Shown here piece after piece: positions 1-41,765 of a stretch of DNA of 64,000 bases. A program made the translations under genes and the position numbers. Below the pieces are notes generated by a model that saw only the letters and a program-made list of their open reading frames with translations, searched no databases and was not told the origin of the DNA. Numbering within the stretch: the first letter of the stretch is position 1; each line of letters opens with the position of its first letter. The stretch spans positions 62,001 through 126,000 of the IMG/VR virus record IMGVR_UViG_3300031997_000001. The stretch is one strand, 5' to 3'.

Positions 1-487
1 CGAACACGTGCAGGTGCTGCCTCCCGAAGACTATGATTCCTACGTTCCAATATCTGCCATCCCAGACCGGCATCCGGATTCCAGCCCTCTGGCAGAAATC
101 TTCCAGCTCCTTCTTCTTGTTCTTGACGCCCTGGACGTGGGCTTCGTTCAGCATTCCCAGACAGTCCTCCGGCACTACGTCGAATAGCGAGGGCGCCTGG
201 GGATGGATTATGACGTCAGAATCAATGAAGGCTATCCGTCCATACTCCCGGAGATATTCCCTCATCTGGAGCTTCTCCCAGAACATCTGAATGTTGCTGG
301 GGTACACCCGCTCGGTGATGACCTCGAATGAGGCGCCGCACCGGTGGGCATAATCCGCCATGAGCGGATGGGTGAGCGAGGAAATCTGCTGGTAGGCTGG
401 ACCGATGGACACAGTGACTATCGCCCGGCGGGACCGGCCGGATTCATCGAAGACATAGGCTTGACCGTAGGTCATCCGTTCAGGCAT
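1..487 (-). CDS. GT-A fold glycosyltransferase (GT8/GT77-like), runs off the left window edge
   Basis: Hand translation from ATG at 487: MPERMTYGQAYVF...AIVTVSIG...FWEKLQM...IAFIDSDVII...YWNVGIIVF. Has a DxD motif and an NxG motif. Absent from the ORF track because it has no stop in the window. Confidence 0.8.
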   Translation of the reverse strand, partial: MPERMTYGQAYVFDESGRSRRAIVTVSIGPAYQQISSLTHPLMADYAHRCGASFEVITERVYPSNIQMFWEKLQMREYLREYGRIAFIDSDVIIHPQAPSLFDVVPEDCLGMLNEAHVQGVKNKKKELEDFCQRAGIRMPVWDGRYWNVGIIVFGRQHLHVF

Positions 488-490
488 AAA

Positions 491-498
491 CTATTTAC
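491..498 (-). promoter_or_regulatory. GTAAATAG promoter-like motif
   Basis: 3 nt upstream of ATG 487; also includes the upstream stop codon. Confidence 0.45.
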
Positions 499-1237
499 TG
501 AGAATCCTATAGATTTCTGGAAGAGCCGACTTTCCTGAACCCCAAAGATGAATGCACCGTTCGCGTTTATACGCCTGTAGAATTTGGTCTATTTTGCCGT
601 GCTCACTCCAATTATAGGTTATTGGGATTTCAGTTGGGGCAATCTTAAGCCGTGCAATGGCACGCGCGAGGGCTGGTTCATCTTGATTTGGGTCTCTGTC
701 CCATTCCATTGCCCAAGTCCGATAAATCAATTCAGTACGTTCAGATTTTGAGAATAAAACAAGTCCGCTATTGAAATGTTTGGTATCCGCCCCGGCCGTG
801 GCCAATGTCAACGCTTTGGATTTGACCGATGCGTACCATGCATCTTTTAGCCATGGTCGTTCCCTATCCAGCGTGATGCAGAAATCGTTGTTCTTGATGA
901 AGTTCCAGATATCTTCAATATTGCGTGGGATCATATCAGCATCGTGGCAGAGAGTAAAATCCCAGGGGCTAAGTTTATACGCGCGGATTTTGACGCCGCG
1001 ATGCCACCAGTCGCCTGACCCAGATACATACTCCATAGAAGTACTGGGGATAACTGCCCCCCTTTTATTAGACACAATTCGAATCGGCCATATCCAACCG
1101 ATCGCGCGAAGATGCGCAACCTGCCATTTCGCGTATTGGAGATAGCGATCATTTATTGCAATTATGAGCATTCCGCGTGTCTTATTCTGGCATATGACGG
1201 GAGTGCTGCCGGGCAGGTGTGCTGGTTTGTAAATCAT
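491..1237 (-). CDS. GT-A glycosyltransferase (GT8/GT77-like)
   Basis: TLCHDADM DxD motif, FNSGLVLF, QDEPAL, YNW, IHLWG; clear paralogue of 2418..3152. Confidence 0.85.
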   Translation of the reverse strand: MIYKPAHLPGSTPVICQNKTRGMLIIAINDRYLQYAKWQVAHLRAIGWIWPIRIVSNKRGAVIPSTSMEYVSGSGDWWHRGVKIRAYKLSPWDFTLCHDADMIPRNIEDIWNFIKNNDFCITLDRERPWLKDAWYASVKSKALTLATAGADTKHFNSGLVLFSKSERTELIYRTWAMEWDRDPNQDEPALARAIARLKIAPTEIPITYNWSEHGKIDQILQAYKRERCIHLWGSGKSALPEIYRILSK

Positions 1238-1884
1238 TCTTCTCTTTTATTACCCATCCACCCCGTATCGCTGCCGAATTTTTTCCTGTTCTGGATGACG
1301 CAAGCGCTCATGCCCCAATAGGGCAGAAGATGCTGTAAATGGTGAGCAATATATTGATCGATGCAAGTCGAAGAATCCTTTGGACCGCTCAGCGACAAGG
1401 CATTATACCTTTCTCTCAAGGCTCCTGCGATATTCGACGCCCACTGCGGATTTATTAGGTAGGCGTGGACATCTACGATCCCGTAGATCCTCCTCAGACT
1501 CGACGCGCCGTAGAAGTATAAGCAGGCCCATTCCTCTCGCCTTATTCTGGCAATTGCCAGCGCCATCCGCTGACGATCTCTAATACTTACATCGTCTTCC
1601 AAGATAATATATTCTCGTGTCTCTCGCGCTATCCTTTCAATTAACTCCAAATGACTCAAAAACGCGCCGCGCGTAGCACGATTTAGGAATCCAATTGCGC
1701 GATCTGGTGTCGGCGCGTCTATGCGTTCAAATTGAAAGCCACTCTCTTTAAGCTGCTTTTCCATGGAGAATCGGCGATCGCTGCGTACGGCTCGGTTGAT
1801 ATACAAAACCTTCGGCATTTTGGAGATCTTTACCTGACTCTTTATGCCAAATAAATGAAGTGGATTATATGTATGTTTCCGCAT
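1234..1884 (-). CDS. GT25-like glycosyltransferase
   Basis: YINRAVRSDRR..MEKQL..FERIDA..GAFLSHL..YIILEDD matches the GT25 (LPS biosynthesis) pattern. Confidence 0.85.
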   Translation of the reverse strand: MRKHTYNPLHLFGIKSQVKISKMPKVLYINRAVRSDRRFSMEKQLKESGFQFERIDAPTPDRAIGFLNRATRGAFLSHLELIERIARETREYIILEDDVSIRDRQRMALAIARIRREEWACLYFYGASSLRRIYGIVDVHAYLINPQWASNIAGALRERYNALSLSGPKDSSTCIDQYIAHHLQHLLPYWGMSACVIQNRKKFGSDTGWMGNKREE

Positions 1885-1887
1885 AGC

Positions 1888-2454
1888 CTATAATACCCTA
1901 AGATCAAACATTTTTGACGCAACGGCGAATCCTCGAGTCAGGAAGATGACACGAGGATACTTCGTTAAGGCGATTTCGTATCGGTGCCTTTGAGCATCGT
2001 GCAGACAAATAACGGAGTCATCTTTCATGATATCCAGAACAGATTCTACGCATTTTTCACGAGCCTCTCCATCAATAAAATAAAGATCGGCTTTCCCCGG
2101 TCTGTAATACGATTGTTCCGATGACGGAATTAACATCGCACGGAGAAAAGGGTGATGTTTTAATACGTTAAAAAACTTTCTTTGCGTTTCAATTGAAATG
2201 ACATAAGCGCCGGAAGCGAGGGCAATCTCAGTACTGCGTCCGGGGCCCCACTCCCATACGACCTTTGGTTTTACTTTTTTAAGAACGTCTTGATAAGACC
2301 TAACAAAAGAATGAATAGATTCGCAATTGCAATGTGGTGTGATACAATTACACCATGTGAAGGGATGGTCAAAATAGCTTAAATCACAAGATGGTGGTGA
2401 ATGCTTCTTGTGGTATATCATAATGCTGACATTAAATGTTTTAAACCACACCAA
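1888..2454 (-). CDS. Class I SAM-dependent methyltransferase-like protein
   Basis: VWEWGPGRST (motif I-like), LYFIDGEAR, CLHDAQR. Confidence 0.7.
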   Translation of the reverse strand: MVWFKTFNVSIMIYHKKHSPPSCDLSYFDHPFTWCNCITPHCNCESIHSFVRSYQDVLKKVKPKVVWEWGPGRSTEIALASGAYVISIETQRKFFNVLKHHPFLRAMLIPSSEQSYYRPGKADLYFIDGEAREKCVESVLDIMKDDSVICLHDAQRHRYEIALTKYPRVIFLTRGFAVASKMFDLRVL

Positions 2455-3152
2455 AAGTGTACTATCTTATTTGTTTTCAGTGCGGCTCTTGCTTCTCGAA
2501 TGCCTGAGTTATGATTCAACATGAAATTATATGTTAGAGGCATTTCTATTATAGGAGTTTTTGTAATACAAAGAGATCTACATAAGGCTGGTTGATCTTG
2601 TTTTCCACGCCATTCTAAATGCCACGTTCTAAATAAATTCTCGACTTCTTTGCATTTTCTATATAGCATGACTCCGCTGTTGTAGTATGGGAAATCATGC
2701 GGACATATCTTTATCGTATCGTTCCTCTCTTTGTTGTCCATAGGTCCGTTAAAGAGTTTCGGCGTTATCCTCTCTTGGACTATGGATAAGCAATTACCAG
2801 AGAATCGCCATATGTCCGATATGTCAGATCCCATTAACAAATCTGCGTCCAAGAAAAGTGTGTCCAAAAATGGCGTCAAGAAATATGAATTTATTTTATA
2901 TAAGTGGCCATTGTGTGAATTCATATCATGTAGTACTGGAATTTGCATTATCGGGACTGGAAAGCTATTTTCCACGTAATCAGAGAAAGCTATGATCGGG
3001 TATTGCCAACCTGACTTAAGAAGGCGCACGATCATAATACGCGCTAAACGACGGAATTCAGAGCCAAGACAGACTACTATTGCGCCGCGTGGTGCCTGTG
3101 GTTTGCGAATTTCAGGTAATAGGTGGGCGGGATTATAACTAAAGCTTTGCAT
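2418..3152 (-). CDS. GT-A glycosyltransferase (GT8/GT77-like)
   Basis: LFLDADL, YYNSGVMLY, QDQPAL, TYNF, IVHFW; paralogue of 491..1237. Confidence 0.85.
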   Translation of the reverse strand: MQSFSYNPAHLLPEIRKPQAPRGAIVVCLGSEFRRLARIMIVRLLKSGWQYPIIAFSDYVENSFPVPIMQIPVLHDMNSHNGHLYKINSYFLTPFLDTLFLDADLLMGSDISDIWRFSGNCLSIVQERITPKLFNGPMDNKERNDTIKICPHDFPYYNSGVMLYRKCKEVENLFRTWHLEWRGKQDQPALCRSLCITKTPIIEMPLTYNFMLNHNSGIREARAALKTNKIVHFWCGLKHLMSAL

Positions 3153-3885
3153 ATGGTATCTTGCTCAAGGCCGCAAATGGTTTTTTGAGCCTATTTAAGA
3201 GTTGTTGCCGTTGAAGCACAGTTTTTTGTTCGATAAAGAAATTGGCATGTGCTAATTTATCTAGTTTCCGCATTCTATCCGGACTTATCCAGTGGCCAAC
3301 GCAGGTCGTTCCATCGAATCCCCATGGATTTATTAGATTCGTACGACATATGTCCAAGGACATGTGACAGTTCTTTATCGCTTTACCGATCATGAGATCC
3401 TCGCCGCCGTCGTGCGTCTTATAGAAGGGGAATATTGCTTTCATGAAGTGCTGCGACATTGAATAACAGGCGCCGAATGGAAACTCTACGCTGTTTCTTC
3501 CCCATCGGGCGCAGATGTCGTGGGCTATGATGGGGATCCGGGTGATCCTATGCGGATGGATGTAAGTGTCGTCGTCGCATTTTATGATGAACTTGTAATC
3601 CATTTTCAGTGCATACTGCATGACTGCCTTCGTCTTCTGGGGCAGTCCACCATAGGTGTCGCTGCACCGCAGGGTCAGGATATTCCCGTCCAGCCTTGAT
3701 TCTACGGGGAGCTTCGGATCCCCGACGACGAACCGGGACTCGAAGAAGTCTGCTGGCAGCTTCGGCATCCAGGTCTCTGCGCAGGCCTGGCGCCTCCGCT
3801 TGGAATTCTCACTCTGACAGGAGAACACGAAGACCTGGATCTTGCCGGCTATCTTCGGGTCTTTGAAGTAGGGATGGATGTACAC
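3139..3885 (-). CDS. GT31-like (galactosyltransferase/fringe family) glycosyltransferase
   Basis: RRQACAETW, DTYGGLPQKT, FIIKCDDDTYI, EDLMIG motifs. Confidence 0.85.
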   Translation of the reverse strand: MYIHPYFKDPKIAGKIQVFVFSCQSENSKRRRQACAETWMPKLPADFFESRFVVGDPKLPVESRLDGNILTLRCSDTYGGLPQKTKAVMQYALKMDYKFIIKCDDDTYIHPHRITRIPIIAHDICARWGRNSVEFPFGACYSMSQHFMKAIFPFYKTHDGGEDLMIGKAIKNCHMSLDICRTNLINPWGFDGTTCVGHWISPDRMRKLDKLAHANFFIEQKTVLQRQQLLNRLKKPFAALSKIPYAKL

Positions 3886-3886
3886 C

Positions 3887-4401: not shown

Positions 4402-5616
4402 CTACGCGGGGAGGACTTCGAATTTCGGAAGGGGGACTACCAGCCGAGTGCCGGATTCGATAAGCGCCTTCTCCCTCTCCCTGAACTCCGGCAGGAAGTA
4501 CCAGGGGAAGATGACGAGGAAGTCGGGCTTGGCAGCCCTCATCTCGTCCTCCGAGCAGATGCGGACGTTGGTACCGGGGGTGAACAGGTTGTACTTATCC
4601 GGATTTCGTTCAGCGATGGCTACCATAAAGTCAGGAGTTATGTTGCAATACTGCATTATAATCTGGCCCTTGGTCGACGCGCCGTAGCCGTAGACCTTCT
4701 TACCAGCCAGCTTCTGCTCAATTAGGAACTTCTGCATCTGGGTCTTGGAAGTGAGTGCCCGGTCGGCAAAATCCGCATATCCCCAAGTGAATGGTGTGTA
4801 TCCAGCCTGCTCATTACCTCGCGTGTTTCGGACGGAGTCGTCGATCCCATGCGCCCCCTTGCGGGAGACGAAGATCCTGAACGAGCCGCCGTTGATCTTG
4901 TTGAATTCGACCTTGAAGACCTCGAGATCCAGGCCGTCTAACAGGGGCTCAAACGTGCCGAGCCTGTAATAGACAACGTGCTCATGACACTGCGTGTCAT
5001 AGCTGTTCGAATTGAGGATGTCCTGCAGGTAGGCAAGTTCCAGGACCCAGATACCGTCCTTGTCGAGGCAGGCATCGATCCCCTCCACGAACCTCCGGGG
5101 CTCGTTCAAGTCGTAGAACATGGCGATCGAGGTTATGACCTTAGCCTTGGGGATCGGGACCGCGGCTGCGGTCAGCGGCGAGAAGTACTCGTTTATGAAC
5201 AGGTTGCAATTGGCGGGTACGATGTTCGAGGGGTCCACGCCGACTCTATTGACCGCCGAGTCAAAGCACCCTAGAGTGAACCCATCATTACAACCAAGAT
5301 CCAGGACGGTATCCCCGGGATTCAACGGCTTCACCTTCAGGACCGATTCGACCAGGCCCTTCAGGTGGTCCCGCATAGTCTGGTTTATGCTGGACCGGTA
5401 CCAATAGCTCTTGTACATCAGGTCGTAGTCGATCTTGTGCGCCAGCTGGACCAGGTCGCAGTTATGACACCGGACGAGCTTCAGGGGAATTAGCGGGCTT
5501 GGCGGGCTATCCTTCTCGTGGAACGCGTTGGCTATGCACTGCTCGCCGAGGTCCAGGAGGGTCCCGAACTCAGCACCTTGACAGACCCTACACTTCTTGA
5601 TTTCTGTAAAATTCAT
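4402..5616 (-). CDS. NDP-hexose C-methyltransferase (zinc-binding N-terminus plus class I MTase)
   Basis: CRVC..LLDLGEQ..AN..PLKLVRC..C.LVQL, VLDLGCNDG, HEHVVYY, GYGASTKG, AIAERNPDK, FPWYF is the typical C-methyltransferase architecture. Confidence 0.9.
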   Translation of the reverse strand: MNFTEIKKCRVCQGAEFGTLLDLGEQCIANAFHEKDSPPSPLIPLKLVRCHNCDLVQLAHKIDYDLMYKSYWYRSSINQTMRDHLKGLVESVLKVKPLNPGDTVLDLGCNDGFTLGCFDSAVNRVGVDPSNIVPANCNLFINEYFSPLTAAAVPIPKAKVITSIAMFYDLNEPRRFVEGIDACLDKDGIWVLELAYLQDILNSNSYDTQCHEHVVYYRLGTFEPLLDGLDLEVFKVEFNKINGGSFRIFVSRKGAHGIDDSVRNTRGNEQAGYTPFTWGYADFADRALTSKTQMQKFLIEQKLAGKKVYGYGASTKGQIIMQYCNITPDFMVAIAERNPDKYNLFTPGTNVRICSEDEMRAAKPDFLVIFPWYFLPEFREREKALIESGTRLVVPLPKFEVLPA

Positions 5617-5626: not shown

Positions 5627-7300
5627 CTAAGCAATGGCATCCGCGAAGAGGGACAACTGCGGGAACATGTCCAGCGTCTCCTTGAGAATTTGCTGGGAAA
5701 TGCTTTTCCTGAATTCAGAATGTTCGACGTGGGAGAATCCAGCAGCGCTCAACATGTTTATGAGCGTCGTGCTGTCGTACATGGACGCGTGATTGGAGCA
5801 TGCCAGGGCGTGGAAGCGTTCCATCTGGGACTTCGCGTTCGCACACCCGTCATTGATCTCGTCGAAGGCGTCGAGGATGCCGTGCTTCAGGCCTTCCATG
5901 AGCTCGCCGGCGTTCGGCGTGATGATCCGGATGACGGCATCCTTCTTCATGACGCGCCTGCATTCCTTCAGGAACTTTTCCGCCTGCCGGTAGTCCAAAT
6001 GCTCTATGAGGTGGCTTGAATAAATCAAGTCCACGCAGCCGTCGTCGAATGGCATCCCCTTAGTCACGTCGTGCTGCCGGAACGTGAAGCCGTACTGCTG
6101 GGCCCACTGCTGGAGCGGCTGGATGTCCATGTTGACCCAGCCGAAGTGGGACATGACGGTGAAGCAGCCGACGTTCAGCTTGACCTTTCCGTCGCCCGGC
6201 GGCAGCTGCACGGGGCCTGACTCCAGGTCCTCCTTGCTGACGACTTCATGGCCCTTGGGAAGCCTCGCCTCCCACCAGGCCTTGTCGTGCATCGTACAGT
6301 GCGTCTTGTCGAAGCCGTCATCCTTATCCCCGAAGTCGACCCCATGAAGTCCCCGCTTGGAGACGCGCTCGAGCTCCTGGGCCAGCTCCGGAATCTTGTC
6401 CTCTGGAATGTGCTCCAGGGTAGCTATCGAGAAGCAGAGGTCGTACTCCTTGTCCTTGACCGGCCACGGAAACTTCGTCAGATCATGCTTGTGAACATGC
6501 TTAACGACCCTGGTGCCGTAACAATGCTTGGAGACTTCAAGTCCGCAGACGGGAATGCCTGCGTCCTCCAGGCGCTTGAGGATGTAGCCGCGGGCACAGC
6601 CAATCTCCAGGACGCTCTCTGGCTTGCGGTCCATGGCGTGCTTGAACGTCGTCCAGTGGACCGGGTAATCCCAATAGCCTTCCCTGGCATAGCCGCCGAC
6701 CCCACCACGGCCGCCATCGAAGTAAAGGCGATCGAAGGCCTTCTCACGCTGCTCCGGAGTCCAGGCCGCAGCGTTGATGGTCGGCTTGATTAACATAGGC
6801 TTCCTTGCCTCGATGACCATGTCCGTGTTGCAATTGGGATGCGGATTCACGACGACGTCCAAGAAGCCCGCCTCCTTGAACAGCCTGATAGCGAACTCGG
6901 GCGAGAACCCGCAGTGATGGGCGTTGGCCGTCCAGTCCTTGCCTACGTAGTTCTGGTCGCCGAACAGCATGCAGACGTACTTGTCCGTCCATTCCTGCAA
7001 GTTCACCAGCGTGCGACACTGCTCCAGCAGGTTGGCGGTTATGATGATCACGCCACCGCCCGGCTTGATTACCCGACATGTCTCGCTTATGAACTGGCGG
7101 ACCTTGCGCCAGGAGATATGCTCGATCAGGTACATCGAGAATACGCCGTCGTAGGTATTGTCTGGCTGCGGGAACGGTTCGTTGAGGTCGTGGACAATGT
7201 CGACGGCCGGTCCGGGCCGGATGTCCATATTGGGTCTGAACTGCGGCCGTTCACCCCCGCCGACCTCAAGGATGGCCTGTCCGGGCTGGAACTGGATCAC
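5627..7300 (-). CDS. Protein with three tandem class I methyltransferase domains
   Basis: Three motif-I plus EH blocks: LEVGGG..YLIEHI; LEIGCARG..ATLEHIP; LNVGC..SHLIEHL. Confidence 0.85.
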   Translation of the reverse strand: MIQFQPGQAILEVGGGERPQFRPNMDIRPGPAVDIVHDLNEPFPQPDNTYDGVFSMYLIEHISWRKVRQFISETCRVIKPGGGVIIITANLLEQCRTLVNLQEWTDKYVCMLFGDQNYVGKDWTANAHHCGFSPEFAIRLFKEAGFLDVVVNPHPNCNTDMVIEARKPMLIKPTINAAAWTPEQREKAFDRLYFDGGRGGVGGYAREGYWDYPVHWTTFKHAMDRKPESVLEIGCARGYILKRLEDAGIPVCGLEVSKHCYGTRVVKHVHKHDLTKFPWPVKDKEYDLCFSIATLEHIPEDKIPELAQELERVSKRGLHGVDFGDKDDGFDKTHCTMHDKAWWEARLPKGHEVVSKEDLESGPVQLPPGDGKVKLNVGCFTVMSHFGWVNMDIQPLQQWAQQYGFTFRQHDVTKGMPFDDGCVDLIYSSHLIEHLDYRQAEKFLKECRRVMKKDAVIRIITPNAGELMEGLKHGILDAFDEINDGCANAKSQMERFHALACSNHASMYDSTTLINMLSAAGFSHVEHSEFRKSISQQILKETLDMFPQLSLFADAIA

Positions 7301-14809: not shown

Positions 14810-26026
<11,217 letters not shown>

Positions 26027-27952: not shown

Positions 27953-27984
27953 GTCTCCCTCCCTGAAAAGAGAAAACCGAACAA

Positions 27985-28041
27985 GATATATTTTCTTACG
28001 GATCTGATCTGGGCTTGTTCCCTTCTCGCTTCAAATATATC
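27985..28041. promoter_or_regulatory. Divergent pair of AAATATATC motifs
   Basis: Minus copy at 27985-27993 faces the holin-like gene; plus copy at 28033-28041 faces the collagen 2 gene. Confidence 0.5.
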
Positions 28042-28063
28042 AGAGAGTTTGCAAAGGGCACAG

Positions 28064-34000: not shown

Positions 34001-34663
34001 GGTCCAACTGCCGAAGGCGTGCAAGGCCTACAGGGTAGCCAAGGCCAGCAGGGTCAGCAGGGCTGGCAGGGCCGGCAAGGCCAGCAGGGTTATCAAGGCT
34101 TCCAAGGCTACCAGGGCGCTCAGGGCGTCCAGGGCCGGCAGGGCTTCCAAGGTCTCACACAAGGATCGTCATTTATTCTGGGAGCGGCTGGCGGATGGGC
34201 ATCGACAACGAATGGATGCACCGGACCGAATCGTACCGAATTGACTACGAGTAAGTTGAACTATCAGTGTTTGGAATTCGTGCAGGCTGCACAGAAGTAT
34301 GCTGAGTGGACCTGTTATTTGCCAGCGAACTATACTGCGGCGGCAACTATTACCGCGAAATTTATATGGGCCTGTGCAAATGCATCAACCAACAGTGTGG
34401 TGTGGGGTTGCTCGGCGAACTCTTACACAGATGGCGACCCGTTTGATATGACTTTCTCGGCGGGAGTTGAAGTGACGGATGCAAACAACGCGGATAAAGA
34501 CATAAATATCTCTGCCGCTACGGCGGCAATCACGATCAAGCAAGCAGCAAGTTCCCCTGCTGCTGGGCAATTGCTGCACATCAGGGTTTATCGGCTGGGC
34601 AGTGGAGCGGATAACTTAGCTGCATCGGCTTGTCTGCTTCAGGTCATCATTACCTACACATAG
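28064..34663 (+). CDS. Second giant collagen-like fibre protein (about 2199 aa): two Gly-X-Gln segments separated by a globular domain, plus a C-terminal globular domain
   Basis: Start reassigned to MIHFSSG, since the upstream part of the track ORF is antisense to 27482..27952. GXQ regions about 28450-30730 and 31500-34160. Confidence 0.88.
28450..30730 (+). repeat. Gly-X-Gln coding repeat, segment A (about 760 aa)
   Basis: 9-nt periodic GGN-NNN-CAR. Confidence 0.95.
31500..34160 (+). repeat. Gly-X-Gln coding repeat, segment B (about 885 aa), including a 69-bp near-perfect tandem repeat at 33167-33400
   Basis: Unit GSGGDGQQG(M/L)[13 protein letters not shown] starts at 33167, 33236, 33305 and (partial) 33374. 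Confidence 0.95.
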
Positions 34664-34671: not shown

Positions 34672-35793
34672 ATGGCAGATCTTGGTGCGTCTCCAGTCAC
34701 GATCAGCGCCACTGCGGCGTACACCATCCCGCTTGGGGTGTACTCACTTCAGGTCGAATGCCAAGGTGGTGCGGCGGCGGGCTCGAATGGTCCGGGAGTA
34801 GCCAAGAGGTCCGGTGGAGGTGGAGGGGGAGGAGCCTATTCGAAGAGGGCGGCAATCAGGGTCATTCCGGGAAAATCATATACATTCACAGTCGGGGTTG
34901 CTGTTGCTGCGGCGTCCCAAAGCAACGGAAACCCGACTACGTTTACTGGAGAGGACGCCGTCGCCTGCACAGCGGCTGGAGGAACTTGTCCTGCGAATCT
35001 TACCACGGGAGGCGCGGGTGGCGCTGTTGTGGCATCTGTTGGGGATGCCGGTGCGATTTTCGCTGGTGGTGCTGGAGGAAATGGATCAACCACCAGCGAT
35101 CAGGGCGGCGGGGGTGGAGGAGAAGGCGCGTATCAAGCGACAGGAAATATTGGACAAAATAACGTAGGAGCAACCGGAGGGGCTGGCGGAACCGGATTGG
35201 CGGGTGGTGGTGACGGCGGAAAGGGAGGGAACAACACGGCTGGCGGTAGTGACGGTGTTGCCCCCGGTGGTGGAGGTGGAGGTGCCGGTGGAAGCAACGA
35301 CTCGGGTGGTGCCGGGGCGACGGGACAGATCATTGTTACTTACACGACCAACGTGACCAGGTCCTTCGGCGGTGGGTATGCTTCTCCGGGCTCGATGGGA
35401 TTCTCACTTCTTCTGGGCCTTCTGGGTCGGTTCTTCTGCAGCCTTTGCTCCGCCAGCAAAGAAATCCCGGATTTCCTGAGCCTGCTCGACGCCTGCGCTA
35501 AAGAGTTCGGGCACGTCAACGTGGGACCCGACGGCGACTACTCCCAGGCCAGCGCAATGATGGAATTCGAACGTCGGGTGCATGACCTTCGCCTCTTCAA
35601 AGAAGCGAGAAACCCCGAATTCTGGATGGACGACTCTCGTGTCGTGAAGCAGTACGATTCCCTGATTGGACATCTTCCCGACCCACTCCCGAAAGTCGTG
35701 CTTCACCGCATCATAGGTATGAAGCCCGTCGATGTGAAGGATGTCGATGTCAGACGGCACCTGGTACGCCGCGGCATCAAAAGTGCAGCGTAA
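34672..35793 (+). CDS. Glycine-rich virion/tail-associated protein whose 3' end runs antisense over the next gene
   Basis: VECQGGAAAG..GGGGGGGAYSKR..GGAGATGQIIVTY is the common phage Gly-rich domain; the last about 130 codons overlap 35404..36114. Confidence 0.75.
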   Translation: MADLGASPVTISATAAYTIPLGVYSLQVECQGGAAAGSNGPGVAKRSGGGGGGGAYSKRAAIRVIPGKSYTFTVGVAVAAASQSNGNPTTFTGEDAVACTAAGGTCPANLTTGGAGGAVVASVGDAGAIFAGGAGGNGSTTSDQGGGGGGEGAYQATGNIGQNNVGATGGAGGTGLAGGGDGGKGGNNTAGGSDGVAPGGGGGGAGGSNDSGGAGATGQIIVTYTTNVTRSFGGGYASPGSMGFSLLLGLLGRFFCSLCSASKEIPDFLSLLDACAKEFGHVNVGPDGDYSQASAMMEFERRVHDLRLFKEARNPEFWMDDSRVVKQYDSLIGHLPDPLPKVVLHRIIGMKPVDVKDVDVRRHLVRRGIKSAA

Positions 35794-36114
35794 GAGCTGG
35801 GAGAAGTCGGCGTATTGCTGGTGTGTCGAAAGTAATACGGGGAAGATTCCGTCATAAGGTCCGGTAAAGGCGTCTCCCTTCCAGGTATCCACTCCCCAGC
35901 AACGCGCGGCAAGCCTCAAATATTTTACGGCCTGGCAGAACGCCAGATAGGACCCGCCCTGGAACACGCCCAGCTCGACTATCTTCCCGGGTCTCGTGCG
36001 CTCTACCAGCCACCTCGCGAACGGGATGTGCCCGTACCAGGAGCTCGCATCGATGTTATGCTGGAGTGGGAGGTGGACGGCGTAGGCGGGATGGCCGACG
36101 TAGGGGAGGTTCAC
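35404..36114 (-). CDS. Class I SAM methyltransferase (Methyltransf_24-like)
   Basis: IVELGVFQGGS, WGVDTWKGD, IDILHIDGLHTYDAVKHDF, GIVLLHDT. Confidence 0.88.
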   Translation of the reverse strand: MNLPYVGHPAYAVHLPLQHNIDASSWYGHIPFARWLVERTRPGKIVELGVFQGGSYLAFCQAVKYLRLAARCWGVDTWKGDAFTGPYDGIFPVLLSTHQQYADFSQLLRCTFDAAAYQVPSDIDILHIDGLHTYDAVKHDFREWVGKMSNQGIVLLHDTRVVHPEFGVSRFFEEAKVMHPTFEFHHCAGLGVVAVGSHVDVPELFSAGVEQAQEIRDFFAGGAKAAEEPTQKAQKK

Positions 36115-37140: not shown

Positions 37141-37150
37141 AATTCTGAAT

Positions 37151-38080
37151 CTAGGCCAGGTTATGACAACATGTGCCTCGTATGTGCTTGCTAAAATTGC
37201 AGTTGAAGCACATGACCTGATAACCTGGAGGATAATGGCGCTTTATTAGTAAACGATAAAAGTGACTACCGCCGCCTCCGCATTTCTTTCTGTCTGCGGC
37301 GCCATTACCATGAATATGATCAACAGACAAAACATCCATGTCGTCAGCTCCACAACAAACGCACTTGCCATCACCATAGTGATACATAACATTCGCCTTC
37401 ATAAGTGCATGATATTCCGATCTACGGTGTGCGGAGAAGTGCATTTTTATATTGCAATTGTGGCACAATAAGCGTAGATCTTTCGGAAAGCTGTTTTTTA
37501 CGATCCAGCGATACAACCTCAAACCGCGCATGTTGTGTTTTCGCCTTTGCTCGCCACCATTGCTAGTGGTATGATCAATGGCCAGGAAGTCCGGATGTTT
37601 TTCACCACAAACAACGCATTTATCTCCGTAATATTGAAGTATGGTGCCGCGTAGCCTATTCTTATCCGCGACATATTGCACGTGCTTGATATGTGCACGA
37701 GTGTGAACGTACTTTAGGGAGCACTTGATGCAAGTAGGGGCGCGGCCATCATTGCTGGCGTCTTTCTTGTGAAACTGAGTCAGTCGTAATGATCGGCCAC
37801 ATTTGTTGCATTTCTTGGTAGCCTTGTGGTTCTTCCTTTGACATGCTTTACAAGTGATCGATTTTATTCCGCTACGCGTCCGGATGACCAACGAATGGAA
37901 TCGGGTGTTTCCACATCTACACTTGCCGCCAAGCGAACGGATGAGTGCAGCTTTTCTCTCGAAAAACGCCCTGCTGCTTCTCTTTGTCGCAATACCATGG
38001 CATTTCTTACAGCACGCGTACCCTTCATAAAACTTGCCAATGTCAAGCTTCAGCAAGCATTTTGTGCATTTCTTAAGCAT
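37151..38080 (-). mobile_element. HNH homing endonuclease-like gene with zinc fingers and tandem HNH domains
   Basis: YGDKCVVCGE..LAIDH..LLCHNCN and YGDGKCVCCG..LSVDH..VMCFNCN; CxxC fingers; AT-rich codon usage. Confidence 0.85.
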
Positions 38081-41000
38081 TCTTGATGAAATCCAGGTCT
38101 TGATGGGCTGTATTGGTATAGATCATTGTGATTTTGTCAGATATGACGCATGGTTCATCTTTCCACCTTGAAACGAACTCGAAGTCATGGCTATAAGAAG
38201 CTTCGGTCCTGTCTTTCCAGAATCCAAATTTTCTCACAAGCCATTTCTTGTGCATCACGGCTGATGTATCCACCCTATATAGTCTTGGCTTGTCGCAGAT
38301 TATATCTACGGATTTAGATCCGTCTGGTTCAACCATCCTAAAGGACCCAAGCGCATAGCTGAAATTCCCACTACTTATTTTTGCATAAAGAGACGACAAA
38401 TGATCTGGTGTATAGATACAATCGTCGTCAAGATAAGCAATGATCTGTCCGGCCGCGTGCATTATTCCGTAATTACGTGGTATAGCCCCGCCGGCCCCAT
38501 GGTTGGTCGGCAGGTTATAGGCGCGGACCTGCGTGCTCAAGACGCCCATCCAGTCTTCCACTTTCAACGATGGGCACTTGTCCCCGACGATAATGACTTC
38601 GAGGTTCGTGTAGTCCTGGGCGAGGATCGAATAGACCGCCTTCTTGAGCAGCTCAGGCCGGTCGTATGTCGGGACGACGACGCTGACCAGCGGCCCGCAG
38701 AAGACCTTCTTGATCCGGTCGTCGTCCAGCCTATCGTAGTCCAGGATAGGCCACTCGGCCCGCACTTTCGCCTTGTAGTCCGCGTCCGTGAAGTAGGGCT
38801 CTGCGGCCATCAGCTTCGAGTAGAAGTCCTCGATGCCGGTCCGCCTCTTCTGATCGTGGAGAACGATCATGTGGCTATTCATCGCGTTCTTGACGAGGAC
38901 TTGGTTGGGCGAACCGATGAGCTTTTCGTGAACCTTGAACGCCCACCTAATGCTCTTCTTGCACCGATAGGCGATAGGCTTCGGGACGAATGTGCGGATC
39001 GATCCGTCCGGATAGACGGCCTGGAGCGGCGAGAGCACGATATCTGCGGCGGTGGACGCCAGGAACTCCCGCAGGTTCTCGATCGTGTGCTGGTCTAGAC
39101 GTTCGTCCGGATCGATCATGACGACCCAGTCGCCCTCGCTGGCGAACTTGTCGGTCGCCATGTTCCTGGCCGTGGCGAAGTCGAAGTTGCGTCCGATGCC
39201 CGTCTCATCGAAGCGGCTACAGTGGACGCCGATGTTCCTGGCCTTCTCTACCGTCTTGTCGCCGGAGCCGGTGTCCAGCATGTGCCAGTCCAGGCTCACG
39301 GATCCGAACTGCTGGAAGTAGCCCTCGATCGAGGCTTCCTCGTCCTTGGCGATGCAGACGATCTTGATCCTCGGGTGCAGCTTCTCATATTTCTGTCGGT
39401 TCGTGTCCATGACTTCATAGACGTTCTTGCCAAGGGCCTGGAACGTCGCATGGCGTTCGTGATTGATCCAGGTACTGGCTACGACCTTGCACTTGATCTT
39501 CTGGGTGCGGGCGCGAGCACAGAAGTCGTCGTCCTCATAAGTCAGCAGGCGCGTGTCGAATCCGCCGATCTTCCAGAAATTGGCCGTCGTCATCATCATG
39601 CAGATGCCGACAACGGCTTCCGGCTCTATATCCGTCGATGGCGTAGCTTCCCTCGGGAGGTCGCCCTGAGGCGGCTTGGCTCGGTTGCAGAAGGGGGCAG
39701 CGATGAAGCCCTCGGAGGCGGCCTTGGCCAGGCGCTGGACGGAGTCGTCGACGAATTCGGCGTCGTCGTTCATGAAGCAGATCATCGGGCGGCTGGCAAA
39801 TCCGGCGCCGTGGTTGCACCCCGCAGCATAACCGATGTTCGTCTCGAGCTTGACGATTTTATCCGCGAGCTTCTGTTCCGCCTCAGTGACCTCGCACCCG
39901 TTGGCGACGAGGATCGTCTCCGAATTCGCGGCGTTAATCTTGATCGACCGCAGGCAGCGCTCGACCAGGAAGTTGTGGCTCGGATTGTGTACGGCCTTGA
40001 GCACGACATAGCTTACATCCCTGGCAGTCATGGCGCTGGAGCCAGTCTGGGTCGTATTCTCGATGTTAAAGTTGTAGTGGTAGAGCGCCCGTTCGATCCG
40101 GACCTGCTTGTCGACGTGTTCCCTCATCCGGATGGACCAGTCGACGTCCTCGGCGACCTGCATTTCCTTGAACTCGCAGCGCCGGGCCAGCTCGGTCCTG
40201 TGGACCATGAGATGGTTCGGCATGCGCTGGAAGATCTCTGGGTCCTTGTTGGAATTGGGGTATTCCTTGCCGTACTTGCAGATCTTATCCTTGCCGCCGG
40301 CGTATCCGTGGACCACCGTGTCAAAAACGACGACGTCCACGCCAGGGTTCTTGCTTATGGCGTCCAGGATGGCATCGACATAATCCGGTTCCACCCTGTC
40401 GTCGTCGTCCACGAAGCAGATGTACTTGCCCTTGGCCTGCTTGACGATCAGGTTTCTCTTCTCGCCGACCTTGCTGACCTTGTTGTCCAGGATGCTCAGG
40501 ACCTCGACGGACTTGCCTTCCGCCTGCTTGACCAGGTCCTCGATGACGTCAGAGTATGACGTCCGGACGCGCGGGGGGATGCCGCAGACGCCGATGGTCA
40601 GCGTGATCTCCTTCTTGACGACAGGATTCAGGCGGTTGTGGTTGACGACGGCGAATTCCTGCAGGTAGAACTGCTGACCATACGCGAGGTGCTGCTGAAT
40701 GGACAGATTCTTGGTGAACGTCGTATTCGTCCAGTTGTCCCGGAACCGGTAGTAGTAAAGCGGCTTGTCGATGTGCAGGCACTTCGACCGCAGGAAGAAC
40801 TTGGCGTAGACGTCCCAGTCGTCTGCGACGGGGATGTTCTGGTTATACCCGCCCAGCTCCCTGAACGTGCGAGCCCTGTAGGCCCTGACGTGGTTGGGGC
40901 CGACCGTCAGGAACCAGCCAAACTGCTGGGTGAAGTGAGGGCCAAACCTATCATAGATGTCTGGGTTGATGCATTCCAGCATCTTCTTGCCGCGATATTC

Positions 41001-41765
41001 GACCCACCTATACTTGGACTTCCAGAAGTCGTCCATGAACTGGTGCGGCTGCCCGTTCTCGAAGTAATTGAACGAGTTCGAGTAGACCATGCCGACTTCC
41101 GGGTCGGATTCGAAGCCCTTCTTCACCTCGTCAAGGCAAGTTTCCATCAGCATGTCGTCGTGGTCCAGCTCGACCAGATATTCGCCGTTGCACAGCCTCG
41201 TGGCCATGCACTTCATCCCGCCGATCTTGCCACAGGGCTTTCCATTTCTATAGGGCCGGACGCGGATGTCTTCCTTTGCGAATTCCTGCAGCTTCTCCCA
41301 GGTGCCATCCGATGAACAGTCGTCGACGACGACCCATTCCCAGTTGTTGTAAGTCTGATCCTTCAGGGACTGATAAGTCTCCCGCAAGTAATCCCCTGTG
41401 TTGTAGGTCGGCGTATAGACGGAGATAAGCGGGTTGTATTTCTGGTTGACGTGCGAACCCCAGACACTGCCGGCGTAGCACTCTTCGATGACCCTTACGA
41501 CGTCATCTATCTTGGCATTCACGTCGACGTTGATCCACTTCTTCCGGATCTCGAAAGCGGACAGATTGAGCGCGCCGGGGATGAAAGTAGAGGTGAGGAT
41601 GACATCCGGCTGGAACTGGGCTATCGTCGATAGGACGTTCGTGGCGTCATCGATATGCTTGACGTTGTAGAGCTTACAGCCCTTATGGGGTACATCCTTC
41701 GTCTCTATGACCGGCAAGTCCCATGGCTTGCCGACCGTCAGGATCTTGACGCCCTGGGTTGCCAT
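38073..41765 (-). CDS. Multi-domain glycosyltransferase with five GT2-like domains (1230 aa)
   Basis: ISVYTPTYN..ELDHDD; LTIGVCGIP..FVDDDD; VSYVVL..FMNDDA; IVCIAKDEE..IDPDE; VSVVVPTYDR..YLDDDC. Confidence 0.88.
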   Translation of the reverse strand: MATQGVKILTVGKPWDLPVIETKDVPHKGCKLYNVKHIDDATNVLSTIAQFQPDVILTSTFIPGALNLSAFEIRKKWINVDVNAKIDDVVRVIEECYAGSVWGSHVNQKYNPLISVYTPTYNTGDYLRETYQSLKDQTYNNWEWVVVDDCSSDGTWEKLQEFAKEDIRVRPYRNGKPCGKIGGMKCMATRLCNGEYLVELDHDDMLMETCLDEVKKGFESDPEVGMVYSNSFNYFENGQPHQFMDDFWKSKYRWVEYRGKKMLECINPDIYDRFGPHFTQQFGWFLTVGPNHVRAYRARTFRELGGYNQNIPVADDWDVYAKFFLRSKCLHIDKPLYYYRFRDNWTNTTFTKNLSIQQHLAYGQQFYLQEFAVVNHNRLNPVVKKEITLTIGVCGIPPRVRTSYSDVIEDLVKQAEGKSVEVLSILDNKVSKVGEKRNLIVKQAKGKYICFVDDDDRVEPDYVDAILDAISKNPGVDVVVFDTVVHGYAGGKDKICKYGKEYPNSNKDPEIFQRMPNHLMVHRTELARRCEFKEMQVAEDVDWSIRMREHVDKQVRIERALYHYNFNIENTTQTGSSAMTARDVSYVVLKAVHNPSHNFLVERCLRSIKINAANSETILVANGCEVTEAEQKLADKIVKLETNIGYAAGCNHGAGFASRPMICFMNDDAEFVDDSVQRLAKAASEGFIAAPFCNRAKPPQGDLPREATPSTDIEPEAVVGICMMMTTANFWKIGGFDTRLLTYEDDDFCARARTQKIKCKVVASTWINHERHATFQALGKNVYEVMDTNRQKYEKLHPRIKIVCIAKDEEASIEGYFQQFGSVSLDWHMLDTGSGDKTVEKARNIGVHCSRFDETGIGRNFDFATARNMATDKFASEGDWVVMIDPDERLDQHTIENLREFLASTAADIVLSPLQAVYPDGSIRTFVPKPIAYRCKKSIRWAFKVHEKLIGSPNQVLVKNAMNSHMIVLHDQKRRTGIEDFYSKLMAAEPYFTDADYKAKVRAEWPILDYDRLDDDRIKKVFCGPLVSVVVPTYDRPELLKKAVYSILAQDYTNLEVIIVGDKCPSLKVEDWMGVLSTQVRAYNLPTNHGAGGAIPRNYGIMHAAGQIIAYLDDDCIYTPDHLSSLYAKISSGNFSYALGSFRMVEPDGSKSVDIICDKPRLYRVDTSAVMHKKWLVRKFGFWKDRTEASYSHDFEFVSRWKDEPCVISDKITMIYTNTAHQDLDFIKNA

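What the first reader, a model, noticed from the sequence alone, without database searches (positions are those of the whole stretch)
1..41765. Candidate phage-encoded system for glycosylating and methylating giant Gly-X-Gln virion fibres
Seen: two giant collagen-like genes are flanked on both sides by glycan-tailoring genes. These are about 9 clear GT genes (GT8/77-like x3, GT25, GT31, GT4 x2, GT2-like, five-domain GT2), one possible GT, and 5 methyltransferase genes. The left block lies on the same strand directly downstream of the 3738-aa fibre gene. Established: some viruses glycosylate their own virion proteins (chloroviruses, mimivirus fibrils), and Bacillus BclA collagen is O-glycosylated. 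Inference: this phage builds a complex methylated glycan coat on very long fibres, for example as a shield or host-surface mimic. No polymerase, flippase or host-LPS export genes were seen, which favours virion rather than host-surface targets but does not prove it.
Basis: partly seen in the sequence, partly recalled or inferred. Interest (0 to 1): 0.88.

Follow-up and report, generated by a model that had tools for sequence, protein, structure and literature searches.

The report
Phage fibre genes with sugar-coating cassette
An uncultured 235-kb phage encodes two half-micron collagen-like fibres beside a large set of sugar-adding and methylating enzymes. The core of that enzyme set travels with one fibre's non-collagen domains in many other phages, so a glycan coat on virion proteins is likely, but probably not on the collagen stalk.

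Summary
The gene cluster is real. The window is bases 62001-126000 of IMG/VR contig UViG_3300031997_000001 (235 kb). It holds a 3738-aa and a roughly 2080-aa Gly-X-Gln collagen gene, 8 glycosyltransferase (GT) genes and 4 methyltransferase (MT) genes, with more GT/MT genes left of the window.

- **The linkage is not to collagen.** A core of four genes (GT2-like, GT4, GT4, triple MT) lies downstream, on the same strand, of giant proteins built from a roughly 150-aa module. This holds in 21 of 22 testable phage lineages, and most of those proteins have no collagen.
- **The module looks like a capsid part.** Its predicted fold matches phage capsid cement proteins and the phi29 head-fibre base. 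In two smaller relatives the gene follows terminase and portal.
- **The stalks lack usual acceptor residues.** They contain Ser 0.5-1.9%, Thr 0.3-1.5%, Lys 0% and no N-X-S/T sequon.

The nearest relatives in cultured phages are the GTs of the GT/MT block after the capsid gene of Cluster J mycobacteriophages. The best reading is a cytoplasmic, late-expressed system that glycosylates virion proteins. I rate it a new variant of a known kind. Nothing here is biochemically proven.

The parts
14810..26026 (-). big1, a 3738-aa fibre gene. It has a 22-aa N-terminus, a Gly-X-Gln collagen stalk (residues 23-2070) and a 1668-aa C-terminal region laid out as (module, module)-beta-helix-(module, module)-beta-helix-(module, module).
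   Evidence: Pfam Collagen E=6e-257; triplet statistics; six module hits; a 3727-aa orthologue in L017.
19817..25960 (-). Collagen stalk of big1: 2048 residues, about 586 nm if fully triple-helical, with 23 register breaks. Composition is Q 41%, W 6%, S 0.5%, T 0.3%, K 0%.
18842..19384 (-). Reference copy of the ~150-aa 'SGRMPAIG' module, which has a capsid-cement / head-fibre-base-like fold.
   Evidence: 227 proteins carry it. AF2 model mean pLDDT 67, with several 10-residue blocks at 87-91. The top 43 Foldseek PDB hits are all chains from phage or archaeal-virus capsid, prohead or head-fibre structures, mostly decoration or cement proteins. BFVD hits include DUF2190 and collagen-repeat phage proteins.
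17657..18844 (-). First beta-helix-like segment, carrying the pectin-lyase-type motif [11 protein letters not shown]. It is hypervariable between strains.
   Evidence: Sequence read directly. L017 is 100% identical on both sides but only 17-50% identical across big1 residues ~2300-2900. Relative P0093 has weak Pectinesterase and pectate-lyase-like hits, below or just at Pfam's cut-offs.
15728..16870 (-). Second beta-helix-like segment, with motif [11 protein letters not shown].
   Evidence: Sequence. No structure model was made.
12306..14800 (-). Three paralogous genes (289, 273 and 267 aa) with N-terminal SGxIxSG repeats like the big1 module. They are probably small fibre or accessory structural proteins, not GTs.
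11593..12249 (-). GT2-like GT-A enzyme ('GT2L', 218 aa, LDDDV and SED motifs). It is the first gene of the conserved core cassette.
   Evidence: Pfam weak hits; alignment A4; 318 metagenomic homologues; synteny.
9184..11580 (-). GT4 'a', the second core gene. It is interrupted by a 458-aa intein.
   Evidence: Pfam; alignment with intein-free relatives.
9460..10833 (-). Intein with a LAGLIDADG endonuclease (Cys1 ... His-Asn | Cys+1). It is inserted immediately before the EX7E catalytic motif of GT4a.
8340..8966 (-). FkbM-type methyltransferase (Methyltransf_21, weak hit).
   Evidence: Precomputed Pfam on the JGI gene call.
7297..8343 (-). GT4 'b', the third core gene (348 aa).
5627..7300 (-). 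Triple-domain class I SAM methyltransferase, the fourth core gene.
   Evidence: Three Methyltransf_11/25/23 stretches; conserved in relatives.
4402..5616 (-). NDP-hexose 3-C-methyltransferase (TcaB9 / TylC3 type).
   Evidence: Pfam MT13+MT23+MT14; full-length PDB matches E=2e-46.
491..3885 (-). Accessory GT block: GT31 (3139-3885), GT8 (2418-3152), an unknown 177-aa gene (1888-2421), GT25 (1234-1884) and a GT8 paralogue (491-1237).
   Evidence: DXD motifs.
28385..34663 (+). big2, a fibre of about 2080 aa. It has two Gly-X-Gln collagen segments (about 215 and 253 nm), a 254-aa middle domain and a 167-aa C-terminal jelly-roll tip.
34160..34660 (+). big2 tip domain, a beta-sandwich resembling carbohydrate-binding modules.
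   Evidence: AF2 pLDDT 94. Foldseek hits to CBM35/36/11, Eph ligand-binding domain, Cry toxin and K2-2 tailspike structures, TM about 0.5. A 92-member family.
34672..35793 (+). Gly_rich_2 protein directly after big2.
   Evidence: Pfam E=3e-12.
35404..36114 (-). Methyltransf_24 (TylF-like) methyltransferase.
   Evidence: Pfam E=9e-20.
38073..41765 (-). 1230-aa protein with five GT2 domains.
   Evidence: Pfam, 5 stretches, E=2e-76; D-x-D matches at several positions along the protein.
26099..27952 (-). Four small genes upstream of big1. They include a weak SprT-like metalloprotease and a membrane protein. Two of them recur near the cassette in relative L099.

Best explanation
The region is a late, structural-type gene array of a jumbo phage. 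It encodes two extremely long trimeric fibres and a cytoplasmic glycan-building toolkit.

**Fibres.** big1 is a collagen stalk of about 0.6 um joined to a head made of beta-tulip-like modules and two beta-helix domains. One of those beta-helix domains is swapped between strains in the way receptor-binding domains are. big2 is a collagen stalk with a distal tip that resembles a carbohydrate-binding module.

**Enzymes.** A conserved core of soluble enzymes (GT2-like, GT4, GT4, triple methyltransferase) is co-inherited with the module-type fibre gene. This phage adds GT8 x2, GT25, GT31, a five-domain GT2, a sugar 3-C-methyltransferase and further O-methyltransferases.

**Proposed mechanism.** The enzymes use host nucleotide sugars, one of them C-methylated by the phage enzyme. 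I infer that they build a methylated hetero-oligosaccharide on virion surface proteins in the cytoplasm before lysis. The most probable acceptor is the Ser/Thr/Gly-rich module and beta-helix part of the fibre, or neighbouring capsid proteins. The Gly-X-Gln stalk is an unlikely acceptor.

**Shown:** gene content, domain families, conserved synteny, fold similarity, composition.
**Inferred:** co-expression, the acceptor, the glycan, and any shielding or adhesion role.
For: - **Operon-like layout.** The genes from big1 to the left end of the window run in one direction with overlapping or closely spaced stops and starts. Terminator-like sites are not enriched.
- **Conserved order.** Module protein(s), then GT2L, GT4a, GT4b and the triple MT, all on one strand, occur in about 30 IMG/VR contigs and 5 MAG contigs. 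26 of 27 IMG/VR loci with enough upstream DNA have the module protein, as do 21 of 22 lineages after de-replication at 90% identity. None of the 40 loci with distant GT2 relatives do.
- **The pair moves together.** It stays linked although its neighbours differ. It sits after terminase and portal in the 54-kb relative L021, and elsewhere in this 235-kb phage.
- **Phage-restricted.** In one genome per species of GTDB, close relatives (44-57% identity) occur only on six MAG contigs from six phyla, and at least five of those carry further cassette genes.
- **Cultured-phage relatives sit among virion structural genes.** The matches in cultured and catalogued viruses are distant. They include the GT/MT block between the capsid and head-tail connector genes of Cluster J mycobacteriophages, and a gene between portal and tail genes of a Methanobacteriales virus (PMC3706429).
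- **Precedent.** Glycans on mycobacteriophage capsid and tail-tube proteins are reported (Freeman 2023, as summarised in PMC12619734).
- **Soluble enzymes.** No GT or MT has a hydrophobic segment, and no flippase, polymerase or initiating transferase was found.
- **Sugar chemistry.** The 3-C-MT matches TcaB9/TylC3 over its full length, so methylation acts on sugars.
- **Virion fold.** The module's fold resembles capsid cement proteins and the phi29 head-fibre base.
- **Strain variation.** A beta-helix cassette is swapped between otherwise identical strains.
- **Active-site intein.** The intein sits at the GT4a catalytic motif, which suggests a conserved, functional site.
Against: - There are no biochemical data, and no capsid or tail gene was recognised inside the window.
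- Conserved adjacency could partly reflect shared ancestry of one phage lineage.
- 2 of 7 module loci (L022, L024) showed no homologue of the window's cassette genes downstream. In L022 Pfam also found no GT among the five larger downstream ORFs scanned; L024's ORFs were not scanned.
- The module model has only moderate confidence (pLDDT 67) and weak Foldseek E-values (best 9e-4). Only 1 of 17 module sequences touches Pfam Phage_cement_2, at E=0.012.
- GT8 and GT25 are classic LPS-core enzymes that need no flippase of their own, so the accessory GTs could act on host lipid A-core.
- No sugar-nucleotide synthesis gene other than the C-MT was found.
Confidence: 0.5

Rival explanations
1. The GT/MT genes remodel the host envelope during infection (LPS core, capsule or S-layer glycan). 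This could block superinfection or stop released virions from sticking to debris. Their position next to the fibre genes would then be incidental.
For: GT8, GT25 and GT4 families are typical of LPS and capsule pathways. Peripheral LPS-core GTs have no membrane segment either. The accessory GTs are not conserved with the fibre in relatives.
Against: The core cassette is phage-restricted and fixed next to a structural gene in 21 of 22 lineages. No flippase, polymerase, ligase, initiating transferase or Gtr-type membrane protein was found. Distant homologues in cultured phages lie inside the head gene operon.
Confidence: 0.2
2. The enzymes do glycosylate the collagen stalks, but through a non-canonical acceptor such as Tyr, Gln or Trp. 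Alternatively, the methyltransferases modify Gln side chains of the G-X-Q repeats.
For: Two GT8 genes are present, and glycogenin, a GT8, glucosylates Tyr (background knowledge). GYQ triplets number 32 and 20 in the two stalks. The accessory GT/MT set is specific to this collagen-bearing phage. Relatives L037 and L102 also combine collagen genes with the cassette.
Against: The stalk has S 0.5%, T 0.3%, K 0% and no sequon. The core cassette is conserved where there is no collagen. Few of the Gly-X-Gln collagen loci fetched carry homologues of these GTs. No PrmC/HemK-type MT was detected.
Confidence: 0.1
3. The GTs hypermodify phage DNA by glycosylating modified bases, to evade restriction.
For: Phage GTs often do this (PMC12619734; bioRxiv 10.1101/2023.12.21.572611). 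The window also holds a Mom-like gene and a dUTPase/dCTP-deaminase-like gene.
Against: Those DNA-related genes are at least 14 kb away and outside the co-directional array. No hydroxymethylase, TET-type or kinase partner was seen. The sugar 3-C-MT and stacked sugar-type MTs point to an elaborate glycan. The cassette sits next to structural genes, not replication genes.
Confidence: 0.05
4. The cassette makes a free or lipid-bound methylated oligosaccharide or a small-molecule glycoside, for example a decoy or signalling compound. It would not make a protein-linked glycan.
For: TcaB9/TylC3-type C-MTs are best known from antibiotic deoxysugar pathways.
Against: No aglycone, polyketide or NRPS genes were found, and no other deoxysugar enzymes. 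The structural-gene linkage argues against it.
Confidence: 0.05

Closest known systems
GT/MT gene block between the major capsid and head-tail connector genes of Cluster J mycobacteriophages (Thibault gp11-gp19, Omega). Virion glycosylation has been demonstrated in other mycobacteriophages.
   Same: Several soluble GTs plus SAM methyltransferases, and a zinc-protease-like gene, are embedded among virion structural genes. Thibault gp11 is a distant homologue of the GT2-like core gene (23% identity over 88% of its length, E=5e-7; PMC3706429). Glycans on capsid and tail-tube proteins are reported for mycobacteriophages (cited in PMC12619734).
   Different: Identity is very low. Here the partner gene is a giant module/collagen fibre, not the capsid gene. 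The enzyme set is much larger (at least 10 GT genes on the contig) and includes a sugar 3-C-MT. There is no kinase. No experimental data exist for this lineage.
phi29 gp8.5 head fibre and beta-tulip capsid cement proteins (Pfam Phage_cement_2, formerly DUF2190)
   Same: The fold of the repeated big1 module is similar. In relatives L021 and L022 the module gene lies downstream of terminase and/or portal genes.
   Different: The module occurs in tandem, 6 copies here and up to about 32 in relatives. It alternates with beta-helix domains and lies C-terminal to a collagen stalk. Sequence membership in the Pfam family is not met.
SPP1 gp12, a collagen-like capsid spike
   Same: A trimeric collagen-like protein on a phage head, thought to aid adhesion (PMC7602432).
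   Different: gp12 is small (background knowledge). Here the stalks have 750-2050 collagen residues with Gly-X-Gln chemistry and large globular domains.
Bacillus BclA exosporium filament
   Same: A collagen-like stalk with a short N-terminal region and a C-terminal beta-sandwich, accompanied by glycan and methyl-sugar genes.
   Different: BclA is O-glycosylated on Thr of GXT repeats (background knowledge). These stalks have 0.3-1.5% Thr. Relatives with the big2-type tip do have GXT-type stalks.
Giant-virus fibril and capsid glycosylation (mimivirus clusters, chlorovirus A064R)
   Same: Virus-encoded, multi-domain GTs with methyltransferase activity decorate virion surface structures (PMC9614988, abstract; the rest is background knowledge).
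   Different: Those are eukaryotic viruses with unrelated enzymes that also encode sugar-nucleotide synthesis. Here only a C-MT acts at the nucleotide-sugar level.

Membership tests
Phage-encoded virion glycosylation system (mycobacteriophage type) | GT genes are encoded by the phage and embedded among virion structural genes. | tested here: met
   The GT array is co-directional with the fibre gene. In relative L021 the fibre and cassette follow the portal. Homologues lie between capsid and connector genes in Thibault.
Phage-encoded virion glycosylation system (mycobacteriophage type) | Glycans are covalently attached to virion proteins (MS or glycan staining). | not testable with these tools
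   This needs virions or recombinant co-expression.
Phage-encoded virion glycosylation system (mycobacteriophage type) | Detectable sequence homology of the GTs to those of glycosylating mycobacteriophages. | tested here: inconclusive
   Only a distant match to Cluster J GTs (23% identity, E=5e-7). Cluster J virion glycosylation was not documented in the papers I could read.
BclA-type O-glycosylated collagen filament | Thr-rich GXT repeats serve as O-glycan acceptors. | tested here: not met
   Thr is 0.3-1.5% and Ser 0.5-1.9% in the three stalk segments.
BclA-type O-glycosylated collagen filament | A C1q/TNF-like C-terminal trimerisation domain. | tested here: inconclusive
   The big2 tip is a confident jelly-roll. 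Its 50 listed PDB matches are CBMs, Eph ligand-binding domains and Cry toxin structures, with no C1q or BclA.
Hydroxylysine-linked collagen glycosylation (animal / mimivirus L230 type) | Lys in the Y position, plus a lysyl hydroxylase. | tested here: not met
   Lys is 0% in all stalk segments. No 2OG-oxygenase domain was found in the Pfam scans.
Beta-tulip capsid cement / head-fibre base (Pfam PF09956 Phage_cement_2) | Sequence match to the Pfam model. | tested here: not met
   0 hits for the window module. 1 of 17 family members hits at E=0.012.
Beta-tulip capsid cement / head-fibre base (Pfam PF09956 Phage_cement_2) | Fold similarity. | tested here: met
   The top 43 PDB hits are all chains from phage or archaeal-virus capsid, prohead or head-fibre structures, mostly decoration or cement proteins (best E=9e-4, TM 0.45-0.57). 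BFVD hits include DUF2190 proteins. The model has moderate quality (pLDDT 67).
Beta-tulip capsid cement / head-fibre base (Pfam PF09956 Phage_cement_2) | The gene lies in the head morphogenesis module. | tested here: inconclusive
   Met in relatives L021 and L022, where the gene follows portal, and terminase in L022. Not seen in the window itself.
NDP-hexose 3-C-methyltransferase (TcaB9 / TylC3 / KijD1) | Zn-binding N-domain, SAM domain and C-terminal C-MT domain, with full-length homology. | tested here: met
   Pfam MT13 (E=1.5e-14), MT23 and MT14 (E=1.4e-40). PDB 4rv9 and 3ndi, E about 1e-46, over residues 6-403.
Intein with LAGLIDADG homing endonuclease | Cys1, a C-terminal His-Asn, a +1 Cys, Hint and LAGLIDADG domains, and an intein-free allele in relatives. 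| tested here: met
Tailspike-type right-handed beta-helix depolymerase | Beta-helix fold with catalytic residues. | not tested
   Only a pectin-lyase-type N-terminal motif was read in the sequence, plus a weak Pectinesterase hit in relative P0093. No structure model was made.

The most novel reading that the evidence does not exclude
A jumbo phage carries a coat of half-micron Gly-X-Gln collagen 'hair' whose stalk is itself modified by unprecedented chemistry. That could be glycosylation of Tyr, Gln or Trp, or methylation of Gln, carried out by the phage's expanded GT/MT set. More broadly, the four-gene core would be a widespread, undescribed system of phage fibre glycosylation.
Probability: 0.1. 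Interest if true: 0.9.

Novelty: new variant of a known kind. Interest (0 to 1): 0.62.

Why it matters
Virion glycosylation by phage-encoded enzymes has so far been shown only in mycobacteriophages. This analysis defines a conserved cassette (GT2-like, GT4, GT4, triple MT) that is restricted to phages. It is linked to a previously unnamed fibre module in more than 20 environmental phage lineages, from about 50 kb to 390 kb.

That gives a concrete, testable candidate for a widespread glycan coat on phage fibres or capsids. Such a coat would bear on adsorption, environmental persistence and recognition by hosts or grazers.

The analysis also shows three further things:
- Collagen stalks of 0.2-0.6 um with Gly-X-Gln chemistry are common in viral metagenomes but are broken up by gene callers.
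- The collagen is not the likely acceptor.
- A strain-level domain swap marks a probable receptor-binding domain.

Tried and rejected
**Searches that found nothing**
- Megablast of 22 kb, tblastn of the big1 C-terminal region and tblastn of the module against 50,697 phage records: no match.
- PHROGs and Pfam on the big1 C-terminal region, the big2 domains, the three paralogues and most right-hand genes: nothing useful.
- PDB sequence searches for the big1 C-terminal region, the paralogue profile, the GT2L profile, the triple MT, 36111-36815 and 1888-2454: nothing.
- Head genes of relatives (terminase, portal, the 421-aa protein) against the window and its left flank: no match.
- tRNA scan: none.

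**Searches that failed or were too narrow**
- Single-protein scans of IMG/VR found only the source contig.
- The first module alignment was too divergent to seed a scan.
- Exact-product look-ups failed for two ORFs.
- The three-paralogue family has no relatives beyond close variants of this phage, so no deep alignment or fold was possible.

**Ideas rejected or left open**
- Rejected: that the three paralogues are GT8/77-like enzymes.
- Rejected: that 37151-38080 is a methyltransferase.
- Rejected: that Gly-X-Gln collagen is unique to this phage.
- Untested: whether this lineage is the 'moraphage' group, which has four core GT orthogroups. That paper lists no matching identifiers.

Full report
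**Source and setting.** The window is bases 62001-126000 of IMGVR_UViG_3300031997_000001 (JGI Ga0315278_10000011, 235,458 bp). Near-identical contigs occur in several ENA, Logan and JGI assemblies. Nothing in 50,697 deposited phage genomes is similar at the DNA level.

The signals are prokaryotic: overlapping stop/start codons and a GGGAGG-type ribosome-binding site. The window also carries homing endonucleases, an intein, a Mom-like gene, a dUTPase and a weak tail-fibre-like gene. These features fit a jumbo phage. No capsid, portal or tail-sheath gene was recognised inside the window.

**The observation.** Two giant collagen ORFs exist.
- big1 (14810-26026, minus strand, 3738 aa) has 22 N-terminal residues, a 2048-residue Gly-X-Y stalk and a 1668-aa non-collagen C-terminal region.
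- big2 is the ORF 27476-34663. Its first ~300 codons overlap a minus-strand membrane-protein gene with a strong ribosome-binding site and then cross an AT-rich spacer. The real start is probably near 28385-28427, giving about 2080 aa.
- In both stalks Y is Gln in about 92% of triplets, and X is Q, L, W, V or Y. GQQ, GLQ and GWQ dominate.
- At 0.286 nm per residue the stalks would be about 586 nm (big1) and 215 + 253 nm (big2).

The flanking genes are as follows.

| Coordinates (strand) | Gene | Evidence |
|---|---|---|
| 491-1237 (-) | GT8 paralogue | |
| 1234-1884 (-) | GT25 | |
| 2418-3152 (-) | GT8 | |
| 3139-3885 (-) | GT31 | |
| 4402-5616 (-) | sugar 3-C-methyltransferase | |
| 5627-7300 (-) | triple-domain methyltransferase | |
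| 7297-8343 (-) | GT4 | |
| 8340-8966 (-) | FkbM-type MT (weak) | |
| 9184-11580 (-) | GT4 split by an intein | |
| 11593-12249 (-) | GT2-like | |
| 35404-36114 (-) | Methyltransf_24 | |
| 38073-41765 (-) | five-domain GT2 | |

That is 8 GT genes and 4 MT genes. Left of the window the array continues with two more GT2 genes and another Methyltransf_24. None of these enzymes has a hydrophobic segment, and no flippase, polymerase or initiating transferase was found.

The three genes directly after big1 (12306-14800) are paralogues with Ser-Gly repeats and no GT signature. The gene at 37151-38080 is an HNH endonuclease.

**What big1 is.** An exhaustive HMMER search with 1200 residues of the C-terminal region found 227 proteins. 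Nearly all matched through one module of about 150 aa (consensus ...[33 protein letters not shown]...), often in many tandem copies. The seven relatives scanned gave no Pfam family apart from weak pectinesterase-type hits in one.

big1 has six copies of the module, arranged in pairs that alternate with two segments opening with a pectin-lyase-type motif (DPAGNGDF[QT]DI). An AF2 model of the module has mean pLDDT 67, with several 10-residue blocks at 87-91. By Foldseek it matched chains from phage and archaeal-virus capsid, prohead and head-fibre structures, mostly decoration or cement proteins, in the first 43 PDB ranks. In BFVD it matched DUF2190 proteins and several phage proteins annotated as collagen triple helix repeat. 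At the sequence level, membership of Pfam Phage_cement_2 is not met.

In the smaller relatives L021 and L022 the module protein lies downstream of the portal gene (and terminase in L022), in the head region.

A strain variant (L017) is 99-100% identical in the flanking genes and in most of big1. It is only 17-50% identical across residues ~2300-2900, which cover the first beta-helix segment. A cassette swap of this kind is typical of receptor-binding or depolymerase domains.

Which end of big1 attaches to the virion is unresolved.

**What big2 is.** Its 167-aa C-terminal domain folds with high confidence (pLDDT 94) into a jelly-roll. The closest PDB matches are carbohydrate-binding modules, Eph ligand-binding domains, Cry toxin structures and a tailspike C-terminal domain. 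The domain has 92 homologues.

In relative L111 the same tip follows a Thr-rich (GAT/GPT) collagen. It lies between a Mu-F head gene and HK97-gp10 and tape-measure genes, with no GT called within 10 kb. In L112 an MT and a weak GT2 lie 5-8 kb upstream.

**The key comparative result.** I scanned IMG/VR with the module and, independently, with the GT2-like protein. Both scans gave one recurring order on one strand: module-rich giant protein(s), then the GT2-like gene, GT4a, GT4b and the triple MT.
- Among loci whose GT2-like protein is at least 41% identical to the window's and that have enough upstream DNA, 26 of 27 carry a module protein upstream.
- None of 40 loci with more distant GT2 relatives do.
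- After de-replication at 90% identity, and including five MAG contigs, 21 of 22 testable lineages show the linkage.
- Contig sizes range from about 54 to 390 kb and the other neighbours differ, so the fibre gene and the cassette move together.
- In the GTDB species set, close relatives of the GT2-like protein occur only on six MAG contigs assigned to six different phyla. At least five of these carry further cassette genes, which suggests mis-binned phage DNA.
- Collagen is present in the module proteins of only a few relatives (L017, L037, L038). In L102 a collagen ORF follows the cassette.
- Accessory GTs and MTs differ between phages. L037, for example, has a GT32-like gene, another GT2 and two single-domain MTs.

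**Collagen is not the conserved partner and is a poor acceptor.** The three stalk segments contain Ser 0.5-1.9%, Thr 0.3-1.5%, Lys 0%, Asn 0.2-0.6% and no N-X-S/T sequon. The big1 C-terminal region has 17% Ser+Thr and 82 Ser-Gly dipeptides.

Of the first 80 loci fetched, 75 have Gly-X-Gln ORFs, up to 3533 aa with up to 590 triplets. Only four of these (short) loci show homologues of the window's GTs. Trp-rich X positions are unusual among them.

Gene callers break these genes into pieces, so protein databases hold only fragments.

**Links to known systems.** The GT2-like protein has distant homologues in deposited viral genomes (23-27% identity).
- In Cluster J mycobacteriophages the homologue is the first gene of a block of GTs, a methyltransferase, a kinase and a zinc-protease-like gene. 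The block is inserted between the capsid and head-tail connector genes. Its role was stated as unknown in PMC3706429.
- In a Methanobacteriales virus the homologue lies between portal and tail genes.
- Virion glycosylation of mycobacteriophage capsid and tail-tube proteins is reported (Freeman 2023, as summarised in PMC12619734).
- SPP1 gp12 is a collagen-like capsid spike, and phi29 gp8.5 is a head fibre (PMC7602432).
- The 3-C-MT aligns over its full length with TcaB9 and TylC3 (E about 1e-46). This shows that at least one methylation acts on a nucleotide sugar.

**Interpretation.** The best-supported reading is a late, cytoplasmic system that glycosylates virion proteins and is co-inherited with a module-type fibre. 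This jumbo phage has expanded it and combined it with very long collagen stalks.

The acceptor is inferred to be the Ser/Gly-rich module or beta-helix region, or capsid proteins. A methylated glycan could shield the fibre, tune adhesion or mimic host surfaces.

The rivals are host-envelope remodelling, non-canonical modification of the stalk, DNA hypermodification and small-molecule glycosides. They are listed separately with their evidence. None is excluded without biochemistry.

**Verdict.** This is a new variant of a known kind (virus-encoded virion glycosylation), with a newly delineated conserved cassette and fibre module. Interest 0.62.

Noticed in passing
window 9460-10833 (-), inside GT4a 9184-11580: A 458-aa intein with a LAGLIDADG endonuclease (Cys1 ... 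His-Asn | Cys+1) interrupts a glycosyltransferase exactly before its EX7E catalytic motif. Relatives L037 and L021 have the intein-free allele. From background knowledge, inteins are usually found in replication or packaging proteins, so a GT host is uncommon.
   Followed up: partly
L017 (JGI 3300032053 contig) versus window 17200-19200: The strain variant is 99-100% identical in the flanking genes and in most of big1. It is only 17-50% identical across big1 residues ~2300-2900. This looks like a domain-cassette swap in the first beta-helix segment.
   Followed up: yes
window 35404-35793: The Gly_rich_2 ORF (34672-35793, +) and the Methyltransf_24 gene (35404-36114, -) converge and overlap by 390 nt. 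Both have significant Pfam hits outside the overlap. Different gene callers keep one or the other.
   Followed up: partly
L009 (= window ~26100-46800), JGI gene calls: Automatic gene calling did not call big2 as one gene. It left a set of short fragments, one with a Collagen hit. Public protein sets therefore hold only pieces of such giants; P0001, for example, is a 1220-aa piece of a 3727-aa ORF.
   Followed up: partly
IMG/VR loci L113-L192: Gly-X-Gln collagen ORFs of up to 3533 aa with up to 590 triplets are widespread in viral contigs. I found no paper describing this collagen class in phages.
   Followed up: partly
L099-L104 and protein P0175: Contigs carrying the fibre and cassette are binned into MAGs of six unrelated phyla (Fraserbacteria, Planctomycetales, Acidimicrobiaceae, Elusimicrobiota, Polyangiales, Parcubacteria). 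An NCBI entry is labelled Nitrososphaerales archaeon. These are probably mis-binned phage contigs, and the host remains unknown.
   Followed up: partly
window 37151-38080 (-), 47976-48941 (-), 56292-57857 (+); L004 20619-20747: Selfish elements are dense here: an HNH endonuclease between glycan genes, a free-standing LAGLIDADG/HTH protein, and a protein matching both HNH and homing-endonuclease families and Mom. A second intein-containing 1226-aa protein lies just left of the window. HNH genes also interrupt the cassette in relative L021.
   Followed up: no
window 45355-48069 (-) and 49003-50673 (-): A 904-aa and a 556-aa protein share a region of about 200 aa. The 556-aa protein weakly matches tail-fibre PHROGs. 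They may form a separate tail-fibre set about 20 kb from the collagen genes.
   Followed up: no
window 26099-27617 (-) and L099 18515-19968: Two of the small genes upstream of big1 have homologues (45-59% identity) a few kb downstream of the cassette in relative L099. A weak SprT-like metalloprotease lies between them in the window. This recalls the zinc-protease-like gene in the Cluster J mycobacteriophage GT block.
   Followed up: no
L021 6444-7148: A stand-alone 234-aa single-module protein sits just upstream of the giant module protein in the head region of a 54-kb relative. It could be the ancestral capsid cement protein from which the tandem-module fibres arose.
   Followed up: no
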